Part shown: positions 2,737 to 48,200 of the stretch, piece after piece
Numbering within the stretch: the first letter of the stretch is position 1
How the letters are laid out: each line of letters opens with the position of its first letter
Source: Bugula neritina
Lineage: Eukaryota; Animalia; Bryozoa
Reading direction: 5' to 3'
NCBI GenBank assembly: GCA_964035545.1
Contig: OZ037765.1
Location: forward strand, 4,970,698-5,034,697
Length of the DNA: 64,000 bases
Made by a program: the position numbers and the translations under genes
The notes under the pieces: model-generated
Seen by the model: only the letters and a program-made list of their open reading frames with translations
Told to the model about the DNA's origin: nothing
Databases searched by the model: none

Positions 2737-3737
2737 TTTAGTTCTAGTCTTAGCTATTTATGCCAGCTGTATATTTTTGGTATTTCTATTGCAAGTACAC
2801 GTTTATCATATGTTAGTATCGCACATATAATGCTCATTAATTTATTATATAGATGTGATGACAGCGTCAATTTGTTATTGAAGTAATACACTGGTAAAGT
2901 TACAAGTCTATAATCATGTTTAGGTGTACGCCTGTATGTAGTAAAATATGTATCTGTTGGGCTAAAGACAGATACTAGAAATAAAGACATAATTGGTATA
3001 CTTGATTTGTTATTTATGTGCTACGTAACTTTTTACAAGTGTTGCTCAAGTTTTTGAGTTATAGGTAAATACTGAAAGAAACGAATTTTCATAATGTTAT
3101 AGTTAAGCATTTGTCCAAATATTGTTACACTTTTTACTTTATGTATTTTCATTCCAAGAAGTTTAATTAGAAGTATTGCTAAAAGTTTATCCACGCCTGT
3201 GCCTGCTTTATTTTTACTTACTTGTTTATGTCAAAAATAATGTATATTTTCTGCAATATGTGAGAGATTTCAAATACATTGCTGTATAATATGAAAATAA
3301 TGATACTTCCTCAGAAGACTAATAACGGGAATTGGTTATCAAATAAGAGTTGTTTTCTCCATAACTAAGAGCTGGCTAGTAGTTGAGCACTGCAAGATGC
3401 ACATGGCAGGCTGAATATGTTTTGACTGACAGATTTTAGCTCTAACTTAAATTTGTTTTATATCTATTGCATTTTGCAATATTATGCTAGTCCTCTAAAC
3501 AATTAAAAGAAATTCAATTAATGCTTCATAATCACAAAAACATTAGTAGATATTTGCTAATATACAGTTTTTTAAGATGCAGATCAATGATGAATATAAG
3601 ATTTATGAGTTTTAAAGTGCTTGCATAATTTAGAACTGCATGCAGAGATATTATGCAACACTTGATCTTATATAAAATATTATAACGCATTATTCACAGC
3701 TAATCTCCAGAATTCAGACCAGTTGTAATATTAGTAT

Positions 3738-4089
3738 TGTAGTGAGTAGTGCAAAGTACAAATACGGGAATCGCCCTCTCCCTACTCTTGGAATACTTAG
3801 CCCTTATGTAGCAACCAATTAGCAGCTCCGGAAGATATGCTTCCGATTCACGTGACACTTCCCGGGCTATTAACATTATATCACGTTGTTGTAAGCGGAG
3901 GCTTGAAGTAGTAACATGTGTTAGTAGTTGACTGATGTATAGGATAATTTGATGTGATGTTTGTTTTATGCTTTATTGTGGATAATAAATATAATTACTC
4001 GACAGCTACCCTAGTAATTGCTAGCAGAATAACCAGCTAACTATACGCAAGTAAATAACTCACGCTCAGTAATTGCACAAATTACTACA
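3738..4089 (+). repeat. 5' LTR
   Basis: TGTAGTGAG...ATTACTACA, with no difference from the 3' LTR seen by eye; AATAAA at 3984-3989. Confidence 0.95.
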
Positions 4090-4090
4090 G

Positions 4091-4108
4091 TGGTGGCAGC
4101 GGTGGGAT
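4091..4108 (+). promoter_or_regulatory. Primer binding site complementary to the tRNA-Leu 3' end
   Basis: TGGTGGCAGCGGTGGGAT lies 1 nt after the LTR and is the reverse complement of the eukaryotic tRNA-Leu 3' end (...AUCCCACCGCUGCCACCA). Confidence 0.85.
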
Positions 4109-4125
4109 CTTGCGTATAGCAGTCA

Positions 4126-5075
4126 TGGCAGAAGACGGCACGGAGCTACCCATTCCACTGAATGAAGGTGAGAGAGATAATGTTGATATACCTGTGGAAC
4201 CAGTGGTGTTAGATGAAGAAGTGAGAATTCTTAGAGAGCATGGTGAAGACAGATACCGGCTGAAGGCGCCCACCTTCACCGGCGAAGAAGCAGTGGAGCA
4301 GTTTATCCAAGAATTCCAAGATGTGATGGAGATTGCAGAGTGGCCACCAAGGGTGGCGTTGCTAAAGCTCAGGATGGCGCTGACGGGCAAAGCTAAGCCG
4401 TACGGAGCGGGACCTGACATAGACGGAATCTTTGCTTCTCTGCGGGCCCGTTTTGGCATCTCCCCCATAGATGCGCGGGCCCGTCTACAAAGGATGCGGC
4501 GTGATCCTCACACGTCGCTAGAAGAGCACGCTGCCACGGTGTACCCACTAGCGCAGATCGCGTTCCGCGATCTGCCTCCAGTACACCGTGAGAGGTATAC
4601 TTATGATGCCTTCGTGCAGTCCATCAACGACTTGGGGCTCCACCATCAACTCCAAGCGAGGGGAGTCACCACAGTCGAAGATGCACTTGCGGTGGGAGAA
4701 GCCTACCTCTTGGCGACTCATATGCACCGCAACCACGTGGCCTCCCGCCAGGTGACCACGGAGCACACTACTGCTCACGCCGAACCAAACGCGGAACCCT
4801 CCGCGGTGGCTAATGTGAACCAGATGTCACTAGCGTCAAAAGTCGCCCAGATGACTGACATGCTAGATAAACTGGTCACCACATTAGCTTCCCCAAGCCA
4901 GGTAGATACTGCCCGTGAGCCTTGCGGGCCGCAGGTACAATCACCAGGCATGGGGCACCACTTCTGCTGGGAATGCGGAAGGCCAGGACACTTCCAGAGG
5001 AACTGCCCTCAACTCCCACAAGAGTTAAACTACCACGGCCCGCAGATGTTCCCACCTCATGCGGGCCGTCTGTAA
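4126..5075 (+). CDS. gag: Gag polyprotein (capsid-like region plus CCHC zinc knuckle); first ATG at 4126
   Basis: ORF track 4110..5075; YRLKAPTFTGEEAVEQFIQEF is typical of gypsy Gag; CWECGRPGHFQRNC fits C-x2-C-x4-H-x4-C. Confidence 0.88.
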
Positions 5076-7282
5076 ATCACCCAGGGAGGCCCGCGCGTCT
5101 GTCGCCCCGCTGGGCGCCGCGCGGAGATGCTGTGAAGTGGCGACCCCCGCGGCAAGTAGGCTCAAGCCACTCGCCGCCTGGGTCCTCTACGCCACTCCAG
5201 CACCAACACGGAGCCGGCAGACGGTTGACCACAGAGCCTGCGAGGGAAACGGTACAGGCGCCGCAAGGCGTACCGCCCCAACCTCGGCAGCTGGTCAATA
5301 GTCGCCGCCAACCGTGGACCCCTCGACCCACAGCGAGGGAGGTGCAACCACGGCACACACAATTGCAGCCACACGGAAGTAGCTACTTCCTACCAGGAAA
5401 GCTAGCCGGCAAGCCTGCCAACTTCCTTCTGGACTCAGGCTGCACCACCAACCTCCTTAGCCGTCAGTTCTTTGACACCCTCAGCGCTAAGGTCAAGGAC
5501 GGGTTGGCACCGTATGAGGGGGATCATGGCACCCTGGCAGACGGGTCGTGCATTCCCTTCTACGGCATTATTGAGCTAACCGGTTACGTCCGTAACCAGG
5601 CCATCCAAGAGACGTTTATCGTCGGGCAGCTCAACGAGGATGCTATCCTCGGGATGCCATTCTTACAACGACACGGTTGTCGCATCGATTTCAGTAAATC
5701 TGCGATGATCATGGGCGACAAGGTGCTCGCTTGTGTCGATAAGTTTGGTCGTCTTCTAGCGGGAGCAGTGCAGGTAGTACGGAGCTGTACTATACCAGGC
5801 CACTCCCGGGCTACCGTCCGCTGCAAGGTAGACGGTGGCCAAACCTCTAAGTTGGGAGTTGTCAAAAGTACGCATTCAAGAGTCCAACTTGCCCATAGCT
5901 TTAGCCGGCTTACGGGACAAGGAGAGATCTCAGTGCAGTGTGTCAACCCCTTCTCAGAGACAGTAGACCTACCACCCAGATCCATGCTGGGTCGCTTCCA
6001 TCCTGTCCAGGAGGAAGCCATTGGGCCGTCGTCGGGAGCTATGACGGAAGGTCCTCAGCAGAGCCCGTCTCGAGGGCGGAGGACCGTCCCAACCCACGCC
6101 TCCCCTCCTCCAGGGACGCGTGGCTGCACAGGCAACGGGAAGCGCCAGGCTATGGCTAGGTTGCCACATGGGTACAGTGAGGCGTTCCGCCACACAGACC
6201 ACGGAGCCCGCCTAAATAGAGCAGGCTGCCGTGAGGTACCACGGGCGGCGAGGACCGCCCCTGCTCAGCTACTCCAACAGAGGGCTGACACGCCCCCGGA
6301 GGCTGTCCAGAGCCTCCGCGCCAAACCTGTATGGGCTGGTAACGTTAGGGAGCTGCCGAAGCTCCAGGAATGCCTTCCTGGGGTGGTAGCCGACGTGTAC
6401 CGAGCGAAACAGGAAGGGCGACGACCCAGTAGTAAACAACGGCGACAGGGATGCGCCGAGTTACGGCTGTACTGTCAACGTTGGAGCTCTCTGCGGGTCG
6501 GGCCAGATGGTCTGCTGACCATGACCTTGGCCGCCAACAGCAGACAGCCAGCCAGGAAGAGGGTTGTCTGCCCAGTTGCCATCCGCCGGAAGTTGATACA
6601 AGACACCCACGAGGAGACTCACGGAGGAGTCCAAGGGGTGGTCACCAAGCTACAACTCCGGTGGTACTGGCCCAACATGGAACGGGATATCCGACGCAGA
6701 GTGAGACGGTGCAAAGTCTGCCAGACCAACAAGCATAGCCGTCTCCCTGGTGAAGCGGGGCGGCAGACGCATTGTGCGAGAAGGTCTCGGCAGGCGGAGA
6801 CTGTCAACCTGGCCGGAAACACCTCCATGACACGTCAGGAAGACTTGGCGAGGCGAGAAAGGCCACTTCCGTCCTTGAAAGTGCGCCCACCGCCCCCAAC
6901 GTCAAGCCTGCCATCATCACCACTTCCGGAACCAGAAACAGGTCCGGAAGTGCAAAAACCCCCCGTGGGAGGGGCTCCGCAAGGAGATACCAACGTAGGA
7001 CCAGGACCACACACTAGGCAACTTCCAGCGTGTCTCAGAGACTGTGTACGTGACCGCGGTATAAGCGGCAGTAACGAAAGTCTAGAGAGGCCTCGCATGG
7101 GAAAACAGGCAAAGAGCCGTGGGAGTTGTGATCACCACGAGAATCTCAACTTTTGCCTCGGCGGAATCTCACACGAGATTCATTCGCTGGAAGTGAAAAG
7201 CCCTAGTCACGTTTCACAACCACGCTGTCCGGTCTTTTCCTATGTTGATGCAGTCGAGAGTAGACGTGCCAGTAAACAGTAA
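4922..7282 (+). CDS. pol: Internally deleted Pol: aspartic protease, spacer and integrase H2C2 Zn-binding domain, without RT/RNase H or the DDE core
   Basis: FLLDSGC...ILGMPFL is a retropepsin signature; HEETHGG...YWPNM...CKVCQ is the IN Zn-binding domain; no YxDD, RNase H or DDE motifs are visible in the 786-aa open frame. Confidence 0.85.
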   Translation: MRAAGTITRHGAPLLLGMRKARTLPEELPSTPTRVKLPRPADVPTSCGPSVNHPGRPARLSPRWAPRGDAVKWRPPRQVGSSHSPPGSSTPLQHQHGAGRRLTTEPARETVQAPQGVPPQPRQLVNSRRQPWTPRPTAREVQPRHTQLQPHGSSYFLPGKLAGKPANFLLDSGCTTNLLSRQFFDTLSAKVKDGLAPYEGDHGTLADGSCIPFYGIIELTGYVRNQAIQETFIVGQLNEDAILGMPFLQRHGCRIDFSKSAMIMGDKVLACVDKFGRLLAGAVQVVRSCTIPGHSRATVRCKVDGGQTSKLGVVKSTHSRVQLAHSFSRLTGQGEISVQCVNPFSETVDLPPRSMLGRFHPVQEEAIGPSSGAMTEGPQQSPSRGRRTVPTHASPPPGTRGCTGNGKRQAMARLPHGYSEAFRHTDHGARLNRAGCREVPRAARTAPAQLLQQRADTPPEAVQSLRAKPVWAGNVRELPKLQECLPGVVADVYRAKQEGRRPSSKQRRQGCAELRLYCQRWSSLRVGPDGLLTMTLAANSRQPARKRVVCPVAIRRKLIQDTHEETHGGVQGVVTKLQLRWYWPNMERDIRRRVRRCKVCQTNKHSRLPGEAGRQTHCARRSRQAETVNLAGNTSMTRQEDLARRERPLPSLKVRPPPPTSSLPSSPLPEPETGPEVQKPPVGGAPQGDTNVGPGPHTRQLPACLRDCVRDRGISGSNESLERPRMGKQAKSRGSCDHHENLNFCLGGISHEIHSLEVKSPSHVSQPRCPVFSYVDAVESRRASKQ
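5024..5069 (+). promoter_or_regulatory. -1 programmed ribosomal frameshift signal (G_TTA_AAC plus stem-loop)
   Basis: Heptamer at 5024-5030 is in the Gag frame; 10-bp perfect stem ACGGCCCGCA (5035-5044) pairs with TGCGGGCCGT (5060-5069); ORF2 lies in the -1 frame across this site. Confidence 0.75.
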
Positions 7283-7305
7283 TCATTTACCGCTCTCATT
7301 CCAAA

Positions 7306-8363
7306 ATGTCTTACTATTCTGGATCGAAGGGTGAGTTAATTATGTTTTTGGTACGATAACTAGACTGCATCAGTCAGCTTTAGCTACACTAGCTAGCGAG
7401 CTGGAGATTCGATAATGATAAACAGTGGTGGAAATACACGTCGACTTTGATTTTAAATAATCTGTCATAGCGAGTGTGTTCTCCATCAACTATTCATTAG
7501 CCTGAATCTCACGAGTGTAACTGAACAGAGTACCGGTCAGGCTGTACACGCCGACGGTACCTCAGTGTATAATCTTTAACACTGCTACTCTTTCAGATCA
7601 CACTCGAGTGACCACCTCCCGGTCACGGGACCAGCCAACCTCTCTGCCTATGGAAGAAGAGCCTGTAATGGAGAATGGCATACCCGTGGTGCTCCGTCGA
7701 CGACACCGTTGGGTGTCACCCACGACGGAAAGGAGAATTGAAGAAGCCTGGGGACCCAGTGGACCACACCGAACCTGCCAGGTCTGCTTTGAGGAGTGCC
7801 CGTCACACCGCTCCCTGCGTTTACATGTAGACGCCCATTTCCTACTCCACTTCTGTCCCTGCGGGTTCCATGACGTCTACCCGTATCCCGTGACAGTACA
7901 TAAGCTGAGCTGCTTCGCCGGAGAGAACCACACTGTTGATGAAGACAGTTTCCCCCTATACCTGGATGCCATCAAGCCAGTCATCAGGAAGGCTATCACC
8001 CTGGCCGCACTAGCGTCAGGGTTCCACGTACTGCTGCTATCCGCCCGCCATAAGTCCCCTATGGTTCAGGGCCCACCCCCTACCCCCGTCAACCCTAGCA
8101 ACACCCCAGAAGTAGAAGAAACAACAATACCCCCTCTAACGGAGACTACTACAACCCCACGAAGGCCTAGCCAGCTGGCTAATGTAGAAGAGCGGCTTGT
8201 AAGACTACAAGCCGAGTTCACACAACTTGCCCCTGATCTGCTGGATACGACGACAGGTCTATACCAGTTGAAGGACTCAGTGGGGCGACTGAAGAGGCGG
8301 CTACGTGCCCGACAGGCTCGACACAGAGCACGATCGCTACAAGAATCAGAGTCCACCCAATGA
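7306..8363 (+). CDS. Spliced accessory ORF3 of the LTR element, a zinc-finger plus coiled-coil protein; exons 7306-7330 and 7597-8363
   Basis: AAA-ATG at 7306, donor AGG|GTGAGT at 7331, acceptor CTACTCTTTCAG| at 7596; the join G+AT=Asp is in frame with ORF 7608..8363. Motifs: CQVC-x12-H-x3-H, then CPCG...H...C, then a C-terminal heptad (VEERLVRLQAEF...LYQLKDSVGRLKRRL). No signal peptide or TM segment. Confidence 0.72.
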
Positions 8364-8549
8364 GAATGCCTGGGGTAGGCACCTTCGTTGAGCTGTAACT
8401 CGTTTGGAAAGTGACGAGTGCTCCGACATTGGCCCGCGTGCTGGTAAGCACCCTCTCTCTTAATAGCTGACTAGATGTGTGTGATCGATCACCCTGTTGT
8501 CTTCTAATGTAAATGTTGTCGTGCTCAACTATTTCTCTTCTTACTCTTT

Positions 8550-9305
8550 CACAGGATAGTTAAGGGCAACCTTTTAGCTGCAACTGCCTTGCTGAGGTTT
8601 GCATTGTAATCATATAAGAATTCAGTACCAGTAAAATAAAATCTCACCTAATTGTGCTAGAGTCAAAATTTAAAAACTATGTTGTAGATCTTCTTTTTCT
8701 CCAGTGTAAGTTTTTTGGAAATTTCAATTTTCATTTTTTTTGCGAAGTTATAGACAAAAAACTGCCGAATTTTGGCCAATTTTGCCTGAAAAGCTGACTT
8801 TTCAGTACCAGTAAAATATCTCAGCAGCAAAGCATGATATCTGAATAAAAATTGCACTGCTGGAATCCTGAGATATTTCTCCAGTGTAAGTTTTTTTCTT
8901 TTTTCAATAACTCTGCTAGATTGCTCATAAATTGGTGATTTATACACTGAAAATGCCATATTTTCTCATAAGAAACTAGCAGCGCGCAGCACTTCACGCT
9001 TCACTGAGCACGTAGGGATGAGAAGATATTGGCGCCTACATAATAATTACAGGCTAGCTAGCTGGCAGGCTATAATGAATAGCTTGCTTTGTACTTTGTT
9101 TATGTAGCACCAATAATGGAATGTTGATAGATAACGCAGCCCTAACGAAGGTTGCTGCTTATTGGTTGTAGTTTAATCTTAGGCTAAACAATTACAAGTA
9201 GGCAACACGCATGCCACCCGCAGAGCAATATTATTCAAGAACCCGAACTACATTTTGAGAGAAATTTATGATATTCTTAGTAAGGATGCCCTTAACTATC
9301 CTGTG
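8550..9305. repeat. 19-bp perfect inverted repeat bracketing an AT-rich 756-bp segment inside the LTR element (nested MITE or long-range RNA stem)
   Basis: CACAGGATAGTTAAGGGCA (8550-8568) pairs with TGCCCTTAACTATCCTGTG (9287-9305); internal direct repeats spaced ~180 bp (TTCAGTACCAGTAAAATA at ~8621 and ~8801; TTTCTCCAGTGTAAGTTTTTT at ~8696 and ~8876). Confidence 0.7.
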
Positions 9306-9403
9306 TTGTGGGTTTACTTATGTATGTTTTTCTTTTTGGATTATTGTATAGTTTTTCATTATGTGTTTTTTTATTGTGTTATCAGAAAGTAGGGCTTTCT
9401 GCT

Positions 9404-9416
9404 GGGGGGGGGGCGG
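9404..9416 (+). promoter_or_regulatory. Polypurine tract
   Basis: G10-CGG immediately 5' of the 3' LTR. Confidence 0.85.
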
Positions 9417-9768
9417 TGTAGTGAGTAGTGCAAAGTACAAATACGGGAATCGCCCTCTCCCTACTCTTGGAATACTTAGCCCTTATGTAGCAACCAATTA
9501 GCAGCTCCGGAAGATATGCTTCCGATTCACGTGACACTTCCCGGGCTATTAACATTATATCACGTTGTTGTAAGCGGAGGCTTGAAGTAGTAACATGTGT
9601 TAGTAGTTGACTGATGTATAGGATAATTTGATGTGATGTTTGTTTTATGCTTTATTGTGGATAATAAATATAATTACTCGACAGCTACCCTAGTAATTGC
9701 TAGCAGAATAACCAGCTAACTATACGCAAGTAAATAACTCACGCTCAGTAATTGCACAAATTACTACA
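9417..9768 (+). repeat. 3' LTR
   Basis: Direct copy of 3738-4089, followed by the TSD GTAT. Confidence 0.95.
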
Positions 9769-10321
9769 GTATAACTAAAGCATATTATGTAGCTGTTGAA
9801 ATTGGTCAGCAGTTTTTATTGTGATCAATGTTATTTTTGTTGTTGTATATTTATATATAGAAAATGTCTTATATATTTCTAGATAATACATATATTATTT
9901 ATAATAGTAAACATGCATAGCAATTGATAATTAATTGCAAAAACAAATATTCACCATTGTAGCTCAACAGCGTTTTGTTTCTCATTGGAGTTGTCGTTAC
10001 AAAACGTGTTATATAAGGTGTTGTCTCCTCCATTAAAAAACGATGGCGATCGATTAACCTAAAATCCTAATTCTTGTTTGTCAAATTTGGAGACGTCGTA
10101 TAGGGCCGCAGTATGTTTGCTACTTTGGAATTATTGAGAACGCACACTATTAATTCTTGTTGTGAAACAGCTCCTCGCTACTTCGCCGTTGAGTTTAAGG
10201 CAGGCTAGTAATCGGTTGGAGTTTCGTATGGAATATTTTGTTAATTTGACTATCAATTGGCACTGATTTTATTACAATTTTTCATTTAATGGGACAATAA
10301 GTACTGGTTGTACTGAAAAGT

Positions 10322-45200: not shown

Positions 45201-48200
45201 GATGTAATCATGTAGAATAAAGGCTGCCAACTGGTGACAATTCAATAGGGGGAAAGGGTGCACACACAGTAAATTATTGAGAGCCTAAAATTTCACTTTG
45301 ATAGCATCGAATGCAAAGTTGAGCATTTCTAAAATATGATTTTAAAGGATTGCTCTATCTTGTCTAATAAATGGCCATTTAGGTCAAACACACATAATAT
45401 TGTGTTTTTCTAAGCATGCATTGACAAAAAGCATTTGACCAAAAGTAGAAAAAGTTAGTTGAAGTTGAGGGTGTAGATTGGTAACAGCCAAAACGCCGAT
45501 TTTGAAATGAGCTGGGAAATGTGACGTAACAGCGCCAGCATTCCTGCTGGTCACGTGACTATACAAATGAATAACTATAGAAATATGACTGTGAGATGTG
45601 ATCTTTCAGCTCGTAATTTGTATATTTATAGAAGTGCAAATGTGAATTATCTCAATCTATAGTTTTTTGACATGTTAAATAACATGTATGTGATAACATT
45701 AGGCCATATTTTGCTTGTAAACATAGAAAAAAGCATTGCAAAAACATGCATTCTTTAGGATGAATGCCTACGATCGATCTAAACTAGGTCAGATTGTGCA
45801 ATATTACGGGCGCACCAAAGCTGACCTATATAACGCACTGTAACTGCTTGAGCGTTATTGGTTGATGTTGTGCTCAGCAACCTTGAATACTAGCGTTATA
45901 GTTAGCACGTGCAGCATAGTTACTGGCGTTCACACGTCACGTATTAGGCTATTCTTTTTCATGGCTGAAAATTTTACCTCCCTCAAAATTGGAATTTTGA
46001 AAAGCTGTTTTCTAGGCATATATCCCTTTGCAAAGTCACAATTGTTTGCATACACATTAGATTATAGTTCATAATTATAATGTGATTGTAATAAACTAAG
46101 ATAGAGCAATCCTTTAAGCCTGTATGACCAAATAGCTAGCCCTAGGCCTTAATGTATGCAGAGGGGTGCCAACCTTAGCACGGGCTGTTAGCGAGGCTGG
46201 TTTAAGGATGTTCTTGTTCTTAGAGAGTAATCTCTCTGTGTCTTTCACAAGCTCTGTGAGAGGGATATTCATATCACCATTGCGCTCCTGTCTGACAACC
46301 TGTAGTGCAGCAATAACTTCCGGCCTGCAAGTACACAGAACGCTACTCACCACTACTGTGTACACAACTTGTACTACAACACTGAGTCACTCAAAGCAGA
46401 AAACCAGCACAGAAATACAATATAATACAACTCCAACACACTCTGCTGCTAAAAAAAGAAGTTGACAAATCTAACTACACTCTATATCTGTTGGGACATT
46501 ACATGAGCTTGGAAAGCTTTTCCTAATTCATTATAGCTTTTCATACATTATTACAGCCATGTTAGCTACATTATGCTTTTCCCATAACAATTATGGCTAC
46601 TACACAATAGCTAACTTTTTAGACTGGTATAAAAACCCAGCATTTTCACTTATCTTTTTACTTGCAACTTGCACTTATAACTTAACTTTTTCACATTGCT
46701 ATTTTCGTTCAGTCTGCGACAAACATACATATCTATGTATTAAAACACAATATCAAAATTATACACTAATAGAAATATTTGGCCACAAACCTGAACTCAA
46801 CTGACATACCTGGAGAGCATATACTTTTCCTGTAGCACTGACACCATAGTCTCGAAATTGGAGCTGTTAGTGAGAGGGGAATGAGGCTGAAGAATGGACA
46901 GGTGGTTGAAGGACTGACTCATCTGCTGGTAGGAGGGTGGGCGGGGCTTTTTGCTTCCTACGGCTTGCCAGTCTCCGTCTCCTGCTACACTATCCGTCCC
47001 GCCAGCAGCTGAACAGAGTATACAAGTAACTATACAGAGTAGAGTATCAATTATACAAAACAGAGTACCAACTATACAGAGTAGTGTACTAACTATACAG
47101 AGTAAACTACTAACTATACAGAGTAAACTACTAACTATACAGAGTAGACTACTAACTATACAGAGTAAACTACTAACTATACAGAGTAAACTACTAACTA
47201 TACAGAGTAGAGTATCAATTATACAAAGTAGAGTACCAACTATACAGAGTAGTGTACTAACTATACAGAGTAAACTACTAACTATACAGAGTAAACTACT
47301 AACTATACAGAGTAGACTACTAACTATACAGAGTAGACTACTAACTATACAGAGTAGAGTACTAACTATACAGAGTAGACTACTAACTATACAGAGTAAA
47401 CTACTAACTATACAGAGTAAACTACTAACTATACAGAGTAGACTACTAACTATACAGAGTAGACTACTAACTATACAGAGTAGACTACTAACTATACAGA
47501 GTAGACTACTAACTATACAGAGTAAACTACTAACTATACAGAGTAAACTACTAACTATACAGAGTAAACTACTAACTATACAGAGTAGACTACTAACTAT
47601 ACAGAGTAAACTACTAACTATACAGAGTAGACTAATAACTATACAGAGTAGACTACTAACTATACAGAGTAGACTACTAACTATACAGAGTAGACTACTA
47701 ACTATACAGAGCAGACTACTAACTATACAGAGTGGACTACTAACTATACAGAGTAAACTACTAACTATACAAAGTAGACTTCCAACTATACAGAGTAGAC
47801 TACTAACTATACAGAGTAGACTACTAACTATACAGAGCAGACTACTAACTATACAGAGTGGACTACTAACCTATCTGAGACCACTTCTGATGGGAAAACT
47901 TCTTTTGAATAGGAGTGCTGAAGTCAAGATCTAAGCTATCCAACCCCATTGAGCCTAAACAAACACCACAATGATAAACACAGACTCACAACAAATTTTA
48001 GGAAACAGAAATCAATGCCTCACTGAATTTCTCCACATTTAGTAGCCATGATTGCCCAAGGAGTTGTTTCCTCTCAAAGTGATTGTCTTGTTTTTTAATT
48101 TCGAGTTGGAGAATAGTTTAAATATACTATTCCAACCACTACTAGTCTGAAGGCACACTTTTGCACTGCTAATGGTAGTAATGTATGGTATGTATAGCAT

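What the first reader, a model, noticed from the sequence alone, without database searches (positions are those of the whole stretch)
3738..9768. Very young LTR element with Gag, protease and IN Zn finger but no RT/RNase H or integrase core, both losses in frame
Seen: apparently identical 352-bp LTRs, intact TSD, PBS and PPT, and a 786-codon open pol frame. The frame jumps from the decayed pre-RT segment (...REVPRAARTAPAQ, ~6265) to the linker normally found after RNase H. It then jumps from the decayed start of the IN core (...QAETVNLAGNTSMTRQ, ~6835) to a Pro-rich tail. Inference: the residues next to the deletions have drifted while the frame stayed open and the LTRs stayed identical, so the deletions probably predate this insertion. 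That implies a mobile non-autonomous lineage that makes its own capsid and protease and borrows RT and IN in trans from a helper element.
Basis: partly seen in the sequence, partly recalled or inferred. Interest (0 to 1): 0.82.

Follow-up and report, generated by a model that had tools for sequence, protein, structure and literature searches.

The report
Helper-dependent gag-protease retrotransposon in a bryozoan
This is a recently inserted copy of an old, multi-copy jumping-gene lineage in the bryozoan Bugula that lost its reverse transcriptase and integrase core but keeps working-looking capsid, protease and a third gene, so it must borrow the missing enzymes; similar cases are known in wheat and mice.

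Summary
Window 3738-9768 is a Ty3/gypsy-type LTR element with two identical 352-bp LTRs, a 4-bp target duplication (GTAT), a PBS and a PPT. It has a 316-codon gag with a zinc knuckle and a 786-codon -1-frame pol carrying only a protease and the integrase HHCC zinc finger. A six-frame Pfam scan finds no RT, RNase H or rve.

The host is not human. Relatives come only from Bugula neritina-associated data.

Both deletions predate this insertion. Five other loci share junction 2 to the base and the right edge of junction 1. All 11 deleted copies form one clade (support 99) nested among RT-bearing copies. The window's sublineage carries a further in-frame loss of about 105 nt at junction 1.

dN/dS shows purifying selection on gag (0.12-0.23) and protease (0-0.26). 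The remnants next to the deletions score 0.35-0.84.

RT/IN-bearing relatives with similar LTR ends, PBS start and PPT exist in the same host. All three examined are broken, so the helper is inferred, not found. A 756-bp MITE sits inside this copy.

The kind is known: wheat "semi-autonomous" GAG-Pro elements and mouse IAP 1Δ1.

The parts
3734..3737 (+). left target-site duplication GTAT
   Evidence: Same 4 bases at 9769-9772.
3738..4089 (+). 5' LTR, 352 bp, TGT...ACA
   Evidence: 100% identical to 9417-9768.
4091..4108 (+). primer binding site (18 nt starting TGG, one base after the LTR)
   Evidence: Read. Identical in L001 and, to within its last base, in L002 and L008; in the RT-bearing L003 only the LTR-proximal ~11 nt match, followed there by a short tandem repeat. 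Complementarity to the 3' end of a tRNA-Leu is from memory, not tested.
4125..5075 (+). gag, 316 aa: helical capsid-like core plus one CCHC zinc knuckle (4965-5006)
   Evidence: zf-CCHC. A profile hits retroviral nucleocapsids in the PDB. The AF2 core (aa 50-205, pLDDT 70-90) has top Foldseek hits to PNMA2, dArc1, Copia and HIV capsids, but E>=0.07. dN/dS is 0.12-0.23, p 1e-6 to 1e-16.
4922..5075 (+). gag/pol overlap (-1 frame); candidate slip site GTTAAAC at 5024-5030
   Evidence: Frames. The heptamer is conserved in 5 of 7 copies. It is not a canonical X XXY YYZ site, so frameshifting is inferred.
4922..7282 (+). truncated pol ORF, 786 codons
   Evidence: P(no stop by chance) is about 9e-9 for the post-PR part.
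5393..5671 (+). aspartic protease domain, DSG at 5432-5440
   Evidence: Asp_protease_2 and gag-asp_proteas. dN/dS is 0-0.04 against the young copies and 0.18-0.26 against the old deleted copies.
6270..6271 (+). junction 1: RT and RNase H missing (about 1.25 kb of L003, ~6925-8175, plus a further ~105 nt lost only in the window/L001/L009 sublineage)
   Evidence: DNA alignments. Protein alignment.
6272..6571 (+). linker that lies between RNase H and integrase in full-length relatives
   Evidence: Aligns to L003 8200-8688 and to P0027 aa 901-1090. dN/dS with the Zn finger is 0.35-0.46.
6572..6739 (+). integrase N-terminal HHCC zinc-binding domain (H563, H567, C597, C600 present)
   Evidence: Integrase_H2C2, E 9e-15. 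Motif positions.
6838..6839 (+). junction 2: integrase catalytic core and part of the C-terminal domain missing (about 885 nt of L003, ~8760-9645)
   Evidence: The junction sequence is identical in window, L001, L002, L005, L007 and L008.
6839..7279 (+). Pro-rich C-terminal tail of pol (homologous to the end of the full-length pol)
   Evidence: Aligns to L003 9686-10151. dN/dS is 0.73-0.84, not different from 1.
7650..8363 (+). ORF3, 237 aa from the first ATG (GTG at 7608): C2H2-like CxxC...HxxxH, an FCPCG motif, a Pro-rich spacer and a C-terminal coiled coil
   Evidence: 98 relatives, all from Bugula-derived data, with no Pfam domain. Alignment. Present in RT-bearing L003. dN/dS is 0.10-0.14. 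AF2 pLDDT is 59, with only the finger and the long helix confident.
8550..9305 (.). nested 756-bp MITE-like DNA transposon (not part of the retrotransposon lineage)
   Evidence: 24-nt terminal inverted repeats, 96% complementary. TT is duplicated on both sides and the site is empty in L001 and L009; the old copy L008 also has a short interval here that leaves no room for the insert. A partial relative lies in L010.
9384..9416 (+). polypurine tract region ending in a G10 run plus CGG
   Evidence: Conserved in L003 and L008.
9417..9768 (+). 3' LTR
9769..9772 (+). right target-site duplication GTAT

Best explanation
The element is a recently integrated member of an old, amplified, helper-dependent ('semi-autonomous') sublineage of a Ty3/gypsy-type LTR retrotransposon family of the bryozoan Bugula neritina, or a very close relative.

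An ancestor lost RT and RNase H in one deletion, and the integrase core with part of its C-terminal domain in a second. Both losses left the pol frame open. The deleted form then spread and split into subfamilies. The window's subfamily lost another ~105 nt in frame at the first junction.

The element still encodes Gag (capsid-like core plus zinc knuckle), an aspartic protease reached by a -1 frame change, a protease-linker-HHCC-tail fusion, and ORF3. Its RNA carries a PBS, a PPT and LTR ends of the family type.

Inferred mechanism: its RNA is packaged into particles built at least partly from its own Gag and cut by its own protease. RT/RNase H and integrase come in trans from a co-expressed RT/IN-bearing relative. 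The cDNA is integrated with a 4-bp duplication.

Shown: the anatomy, shared junctions, single origin, multiple independent insertions, and purifying selection on gag, PR and ORF3. Inferred: frameshifting, particle assembly, and the identity and present activity of the helper.
For: - **Anatomy and missing domains:**
- **Host:** all close relatives are on JGI contigs named after the B. neritina mitochondrial accession.
- **Shared junctions:**
- **Single origin:** the deleted forms are one clade, SH-aLRT 99, with one change on the tree. They are nested within RT-bearing copies. The tree used only columns upstream of junction 1.
- **Independent insertions:** window TSD GTAT with LTRs 100% identical; L008 TSD ATAA with LTRs 95%. 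The sister copy L001/L009 is 97.7% identical, lacks the MITE and has different flanks.
- **Selection within the deleted clade (NG86):** gag 0.12-0.23, PR 0-0.26, ORF3 0.10-0.14, all p<=2e-4. Wrong-frame controls gave 1.2-1.4.
- **gag tracks the deleted lineage:** 75-79% aa to the deleted copies L005, L007 and L008, against 50-68% to the RT-bearing L003, L010 and L011.
- **Family-type cis signals in an RT/IN-bearing relative:** TGT..ACA ends, the same LTR-end/PBS junction, a similar PPT and a 4-bp TSD.
- **Abundance:** the deleted form was found in 4 of the 4 loci first picked by gag similarity.
Against: - No intact helper was found. The three RT-bearing loci examined (L003/L004, L010, L011/L012) all have a fragmented pol.
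- The search could not have seen an intact pol of about 1,500-1,600 aa, because of the length window.
- Only metagenome fragments of the host were available, so copy numbers and age distributions are unknown.
- Divergence between the two young copies is uneven: about 1% in the pol remnant against dS 0.09-0.14 in gag, PR and ORF3. This points to recombination, so part of the low dN/dS could be imported.
- The capsid fold match is weak (E>=0.07, TM 0.4).
- The slip site is non-canonical.
- No expression data are available.
Confidence: 0.8

Rival explanations
1. It is a passive deletion derivative. The lineage is mobilised entirely in trans, including Gag and PR. Its ORFs look conserved only because its RNA repeatedly recombines with co-packaged RNA of autonomous elements whose genes are under selection.
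For: Divergence along the window/L009 pair is uneven. The lineage-specific pol remnant is about 1% diverged, while gag, PR and ORF3 have dS of 0.09-0.14. ORF3 dS against the old copies is about three times that of gag. Both suggest mosaic histories.
Against: The window's gag is closer to the gags of other deleted copies (75-79%) than to any RT-bearing copy seen (50-68%). PR plus post-PR of all deleted copies is monophyletic. No RT-bearing protein exceeds 62% identity to the window's PR region. Low dN/dS also holds in comparisons among deleted copies only.
Confidence: 0.12
2. It is a one-off defective copy or an assembly artefact. A full-length element would have lost RT and IN at this locus by local deletion or mis-assembly.
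For: None beyond the a priori frequency of such events. Identical LTRs could in principle come from assembly collapse.
Against: The same junctions occur in independent contigs from other samples, at 75-98% identity, with different flanks and TSDs.
Confidence: 0.02
3. It is a dead relic family. The deleted lineage amplified in the past and is now only decaying. The open frames reflect the youth of this one copy, not function.
For: Old copies carry stops and frameshifts: L005, L007 and L008 have 1-4 stops per segment. Every RT-bearing copy seen is broken.
Against: 352/352 identical LTRs with an intact TSD mean a recent integration. A MITE-free sister copy at 97.7% exists. The excess of synonymous over non-synonymous change between the young copies (gag 17-19.5 against 7-8.5; PR 6-8 against 0-1) shows selection acted within the sublineage that carries the secondary ~105-nt loss.
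Confidence: 0.06

Closest known systems
Wheat/barley RLG_Sabrina_SA, a 'semi-autonomous' gypsy element encoding only GAG-Pro, proposed to be mobilised by RLG_Wilma (PMC9744471)
   Same: A Ty3/gypsy LTR element whose whole population lacks RT and INT but keeps an intact Gag plus protease ORF. It is high in copy number and long-lived, and depends on a related autonomous partner recognised through LTR termini and PBS.
   Different: It is a plant family with almost no sequence similarity left to its partner. Here the host is an animal (a bryozoan). The deleted lineage is still 72-78% nt identical to RT-bearing relatives and nested among them. The integrase HHCC finger and pol tail remain fused in frame to PR, and a conserved ORF3 is present.
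Mouse IAP 1Δ1 proviruses (PMC6466679)
   Same: An internal deletion leaves an open frame that encodes a fusion protein. Transposition is non-autonomous and needs proteins in trans. The deleted form nonetheless accounts for most new insertions.
   Different: IAP is a class II endogenous retrovirus. Its single 1.9-kb deletion removes part of gag and pol but leaves RT and IN. Here gag is whole and RT, RNase H and the IN core are gone. Cis action of the fusion protein is shown for IAP and untested here.
TR-GAG elements of plants (PMC4350172)
   Same: Non-autonomous LTR elements that keep a gag ORF and appear active without enzymatic domains.
   Different: TR-GAG elements are under 4 kb with gag as the only ORF. 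This element is about 5.3 kb without the MITE and has gag, PR-HHCC and ORF3.
ETn/MusD, VL30/MLV and LARD/TRIM-type non-coding non-autonomous LTR elements (PMC6466679; LARD/TRIM from general knowledge)
   Same: They depend on a helper's RT and IN, and share LTR, PBS and PPT signals with the helper.
   Different: Those elements have no conserved coding capacity. Here three ORFs are under purifying selection.

Membership tests
LTR retrotransposon, Ty3/gypsy type (Metaviridae-like) | Direct LTRs ending TG..CA, a short target-site duplication, a PBS next to the 5' LTR and a PPT next to the 3' LTR | tested here: met
   The 4-bp TSD is also seen in L008 and, with one mismatch, in L003.
LTR retrotransposon, Ty3/gypsy type (Metaviridae-like) | pol domain order PR-RT-RNase H-IN in the family | tested here: met
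   The full-length relative L003 has PR, RVT_1, RT_RNaseH, then the H2C2 region, rve and SH3_Tf2-1 in that order. P0027 and P0028 have the same order. The window copy itself keeps only PR and H2C2, in that order.
LTR retrotransposon, Ty3/gypsy type (Metaviridae-like) | Gag with a capsid fold and a CCHC nucleocapsid knuckle | tested here: inconclusive
   The knuckle is met. For the capsid fold, the top structural neighbours are retroelement capsids, but at E>=0.07 and TM about 0.4.
Non-autonomous / 'semi-autonomous' GAG-Pro LTR element | No RT, RNase H or integrase catalytic core anywhere in the element | tested here: met
   Six-frame Pfam scan at E<=1.
Non-autonomous / 'semi-autonomous' GAG-Pro LTR element | Intact gag and protease reading frames kept by selection | tested here: met
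   ORFs. dN/dS is 0.12-0.23 for gag and 0-0.26 for PR, with wrong-frame controls. Caveat: recombination may contribute.
Non-autonomous / 'semi-autonomous' GAG-Pro LTR element | Many copies with the same internal structure at different genomic sites | tested here: met
   Window, L001/L009, L002, L005/L006, L007 and L008, plus P0003, P0004, P0005, P0007, P0010, P0011 and P0014.
Non-autonomous / 'semi-autonomous' GAG-Pro LTR element | A coding-competent autonomous partner with compatible LTR ends and PBS, active over the same period | tested here: inconclusive
   RT/IN-bearing relatives with matching termini, PBS start and PPT exist. All three examined are broken. The host genome could not be searched.
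Non-autonomous / 'semi-autonomous' GAG-Pro LTR element | Actual mobilisation in trans | not testable with these tools
   Needs a transposition assay or insertion-polymorphism data.
TR-GAG | Short (<4 kb) element with gag as the sole ORF | tested here: not met
   About 5.27 kb without the MITE, with three ORFs.
LARD / TRIM | No protein-coding capacity in the internal region | tested here: not met
   gag, PR-HHCC and ORF3 are open and constrained.
IAP 1Δ1-like in-frame deletion derivative | An internal deletion that leaves one open frame encoding a fusion protein | tested here: met
   PR, linker, HHCC and tail lie in one 786-codon frame across both junctions.
IAP 1Δ1-like in-frame deletion derivative | The fusion protein promotes the element's own transposition in cis | not testable with these tools
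   The only indirect hint is a dN/dS of 0.35-0.46 for linker plus HHCC.

The most novel reading that the evidence does not exclude
The retained protease-linker-HHCC fusion and ORF3 are not leftovers but adaptations of a parasite-of-a-parasite. On this reading the integrase N-terminal zinc domain, which mediates multimerisation in retroviral integrases, lets the truncated protein dock onto the helper's integrase or Gag-Pol. That would draw helper enzymes into particles built from the element's own Gag. It would give the deleted lineage a cis advantage and explain why it outnumbers full-length copies. The evidence does not exclude this: linker plus HHCC has dN/dS of 0.35-0.46, with the four zinc ligands kept in the window, P0002 and P0014.
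Probability: 0.15. Interest if true: 0.7.

Novelty: new member of a known kind. Interest (0 to 1): 0.45.

Why it matters
It gives a well-documented animal example of a gag-protease 'semi-autonomous' Ty3/gypsy lineage. Until now such lineages have mainly been described in cereals.

The evidence is clean in three respects. The deletion junctions are shared to the base, the deleted forms have a single origin, and deletion 1 can be seen to have happened in two steps. There is also codon-level evidence that the parasite keeps its structural genes.

It also flags an unannotated ORF3 family that is under strong constraint. This family is found only in Bugula-derived data, in both autonomous-type and deleted elements.

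Practically, a repeat annotation of bryozoan genomes that asks for RT or IN would miss or misclassify what appears to be the commonest form of this family.

Tried and rejected
- **Metagenome scans.** Two scans of metagenome contigs, one with a protein-profile pattern and one with an LTR-end/PBS DNA pattern, returned nothing. That collection evidently lacks the Bugula samples, so copies had to be fetched one protein at a time.
- **Rfam and tRNA scans.** Both scans of the window found nothing.
- **Other copies in the window.** There is no other copy of the LTR or the element in the 64-kb window.
- **ORF3 annotation.** No Pfam hit, and only insignificant PDB profile hits to C2H2 fingers and coiled coils. 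The AF2 model has pLDDT 59, so I did not run a fold search on it.
- **gag.** The profile matches PDB entries only through the zinc knuckle.
- **PR dN/dS.** The protease row was computed out of frame (stops, omega >1) and is void. It was redone in frame, which agrees.
- **L001 as a nested insertion.** I first read the start of L001 as a nested insertion into an inverted copy. L009 shows that the same sequences can be joined differently, so that flank may be an assembly artefact. I do not use it for a TSD.
- **The big representative-protein search.** Not used. No claim here rests on the absence of relatives, and the word searches and family scans had already settled what the proteins are.
- **Host check.** The contig is not human: GC is 35%, CpG o/e is 0.40, and all relatives come from B. 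neritina-associated samples.
Full report
**Observation**

The region 3738-9768 is bounded by two 352-bp direct repeats that are identical at every base and begin TGT and end ACA. The four bases GTAT flank both ends.

One base after the 5' LTR lies an 18-nt primer binding site starting TGG (4091-4108). A purine-rich tract ending in a run of ten G abuts the 3' LTR (9384-9416).

Inside are three ORFs:
- **gag** (4125-5075, 316 aa) with a CCHC zinc knuckle.
- **pol** (4922-7282, 786 codons), which overlaps gag by 154 nt in the -1 frame. It carries an aspartic protease domain (DSG at 5432-5440) and the integrase HHCC zinc-binding domain, and nothing else recognisable.

I translated every stop-to-stop piece of at least 40 aa in all six frames of the internal region and scanned all 63 against Pfam at E<=1. 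There is no reverse transcriptase, RNase H or rve hit. From base composition, the 533 stop-free codons downstream of the protease have a chance probability of about 9e-9.

**Host**

The window is AT-rich (35% GC, CpG o/e 0.40) while the element's coding part is 57% GC.

Every close relative of its three proteins comes from two JGI samples. The contigs in those samples are named after accession AY690838, which papers cite as a mitochondrial genome of the bryozoan Bugula neritina. I therefore take the window to be from B. neritina or a very close relative. It is not human.

Because this is a retrovirus-like element of an animal, I compared copies and noted where they are broken.

**Are the deletions older than this insertion?**

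Yes. A full-length relative, L003 (L004 is the same locus in the second sample), has 98-99% identical LTRs and runs gag, PR, RT, RNase H, HHCC, rve, SH3-like and ORF3.

- **Junction 1.** The window skips about 1.25 kb of L003 at 6270/6271 (L003 ~6925-8175: RT and RNase H).
- **Junction 2.** It skips about 885 nt at 6838/6839 (L003 ~8760-9645: the integrase core and part of the C-terminal domain).
- **Sharing.** The junction-2 sequence is the same in the window, L001, L002, L005, L007 and L008. The right edge of junction 1 is likewise shared.
- **Two steps at junction 1.** The older deleted copies keep about 105 nt more on the left side. This is a remnant of the RT N-terminus read in a shifted frame. 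The window and its 98% sisters L001/L009 have lost that piece as well, again in frame. L007 has its own larger loss there.
- **Other contigs.** Further proteins from other contigs also cross junction 1 without RT (P0003, P0004, P0005, P0007, P0010, P0011, P0014). P0002, P0011 and P0014 cross junction 2.

**One origin, then spread**

I built a maximum-likelihood tree of the protease and post-protease region only, so the deleted columns themselves play no part.
- All 11 deleted copies fall in one clade (SH-aLRT 99, one change of state).
- That clade is nested among RT-bearing Bugula copies.
- Its internal branches are long, including a branch of 0.24 leading to the window plus P0001.

The lineage therefore kept replicating and diversifying after the loss.

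Independent integration is shown by different flanks and duplications. The window has GTAT with LTRs 100% identical. L008 has ATAA with LTRs 95%. L003 has CTGG/CTAG.

The four loci I first picked only by gag similarity on longer contigs all turned out to be the deleted form. Three loci with more distant gags were RT-bearing.

**Does it keep its own genes?**

Nei-Gojobori dN/dS was computed in the window's frames.

| Segment | vs young sisters (L001/L009) | vs old deleted copies (L002, L005, L007, L008) |
|---|---|---|
| gag | 0.12-0.13 (17-19.5 synonymous vs 7-8.5 non-synonymous changes, p about 1e-6 to 2e-7) | 0.19-0.23 (p down to 1e-16) |
| protease | 0-0.04 | 0.18-0.26 |
| ORF3 | 0.14 | 0.10-0.13 (L005 and L008 only) |
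| post-PR segment | - | about 0.4 |
| linker plus HHCC | - | 0.35-0.46 |
| codons next to junction 2 | - | above 1 (L002 only) |
| Pro-rich tail | - | 0.73-0.84, not different from 1 |

Reading gag in the two wrong frames gives 1.2-1.4, so the method behaves. The protease row was out of frame and is superseded.

The window's gag is closer to the gags of other deleted copies (75-79% aa) than to those of RT-bearing copies (50-68%). It has therefore evolved with the deleted lineage.

An AlphaFold model of Gag has a confident all-helical core (aa 50-205). Its best structural neighbours are retroelement capsids (PNMA2, dArc1, Copia, HIV CA). The scores are weak (E>=0.07), so this is only consistent, not proof.

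**ORF3**

ORF3 is a protein of about 245 aa. It has a C2H2-like CxxC...HxxxH motif, an invariant FCPCG stretch, a Pro-rich spacer and a C-terminal coiled coil.

It has 98 relatives, all in Bugula-derived data, and no Pfam domain. It is also present in RT-bearing L003. Profile and structure searches gave nothing significant. Its function is unknown. A nucleic-acid-binding accessory protein is my guess.

**Helper**

The element has no polymerase or integrase core, yet it carries the marks of a recent integrase-mediated insertion. The enzymes must therefore have come in trans.

RT/IN-bearing relatives in the same host share several features with it:
- the TGT..ACA LTR ends;
- the LTR-end/PBS junction;
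- a similar polypurine tract;
- the 4-bp duplication.

However, the three such loci I could inspect all have a pol broken into several frames. The word search could not have listed an intact pol of about 1,500-1,600 aa, because of its length window. Both scans of the metagenome contig collection came back empty. The helper is thus inferred and not identified.

**An unexplained point**

Between the window and L009, the near-neutral pol remnant (about 6000-7340) differs by only about 1%. Synonymous sites of gag, PR and ORF3 differ by 9-14%, and the LTR by about 4%.

That unevenness suggests template-switch recombination between sublineages. Part of the selection signal could therefore be imported. 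This keeps alive the rival that Gag and PR are also supplied in trans. The gag and PR phylogenetic affinities argue against recent import from any RT-bearing copy seen so far.

**Nested element**

The AT-rich 3' part is mostly a 756-bp insertion (8550-9305). It has 24-nt terminal inverted repeats, and TT is duplicated at both sides. The site is empty in L001 and L009, and the old copy L008 has a correspondingly short interval there. A partial relative occurs in L010. It is a MITE-like DNA transposon. It entered either this copy or its immediate source.

**Comparison with what is known**

In mechanism and architecture the closest described case is wheat RLG_Sabrina_SA. This is a gypsy element that encodes only GAG-Pro, is called 'semi-autonomous' and is thought to be mobilised by RLG_Wilma (PMC9744471).

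Mouse IAP 1Δ1 is the closest animal parallel for an in-frame deletion derivative that outcompetes its full-length parent. Its fusion protein acts in cis (PMC6466679).

Plant TR-GAG elements keep gag only (PMC4350172). The element fails the TR-GAG and LARD/TRIM definitions.

I file it as a new member of the known kind 'helper-dependent LTR retrotransposon that retains structural genes'. It is notable for four things: its host phylum, the base-level evidence for a stepwise in-frame reduction, the retained HHCC finger and ORF3.

**Verdict**

Interest is moderate.

Noticed in passing
window 8550-9305: A nested 756-bp MITE-like DNA transposon inside the retrotransposon's 3' untranslated part. It has 24-nt terminal inverted repeats starting CACAGG, and TT is duplicated on both sides. 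Sister copies have an empty site. The 2-bp duplication and CAC... termini recall CACTA/Mirage-type elements; that comparison is from memory and untested.
   Followed up: partly
window 7650-8363 (GTG at 7608); L003 10475-11231; L005 9446-10102: ORF3 is a conserved protein of about 245 aa with a C2H2-like zinc finger, an FCPCG motif and a C-terminal coiled coil. It has 98 relatives, only in Bugula-derived data, and no Pfam family. It has the strongest purifying selection in the element (dN/dS 0.10-0.14). In the window, the upstream ATG used by many copies reads GTG.
   Followed up: partly
P0092, P0149: Other deletion derivatives exist in the same family. One protein joins a gag-like N-terminus to RNase H domains, and another joins gag-like sequence to rve. 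The family has therefore produced several internally deleted forms.
   Followed up: no
window 3738-8549 vs L009: Divergence between the two young copies is uneven: about 1% in the pol remnant and 3.5-5% in gag, ORF3 and the LTR. There is also an indel of about 85 nt at window ~7474-7558. This suggests a recombinant (mosaic) ancestry.
   Followed up: partly
L001 1-184; L009 1-1689: L001 starts with an inverted copy of the 3' UTR plus the first 26 nt of the LTR, directly before the 5' LTR. L009 runs ORF3, LTR, gag, pol. These are either head-to-head or tandem copies, or repeat-induced assembly joins.
   Followed up: partly
L003 4917-4960: In the RT-bearing relative, the PBS region is followed by a short tandem repeat (GGCAGCAGT units) that replaces the distal half of the PBS seen in the deleted lineage.
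   Followed up: no
window 46951-47934 (+): A 327-aa ORF with coiled-coil-type Pfam hits (Snapin_Pallidin at E 6e-10, above that family's cut-off but with no single stretch passing on its own; weaker Nup54 and MscS_porin hits). It may be an exon-rich host gene or a low-complexity coiled coil.
   Followed up: no
window 10000-64000 vs 4125-8360: Host flanks are strongly CpG-depleted (o/e 0.40, GC 34%). The element is GC-rich (57%) with CpG o/e 0.78. Many amino-acid differences between copies are of the CpG-decay type, such as R to W, Q, C or H.
   Followed up: partly
L008 10465-11349: A tandem array of 117-nt units (six overlapping 300-nt matches) lies inside a 384-aa ORF downstream of the old deleted copy. 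It is unrelated to the element.
   Followed up: no
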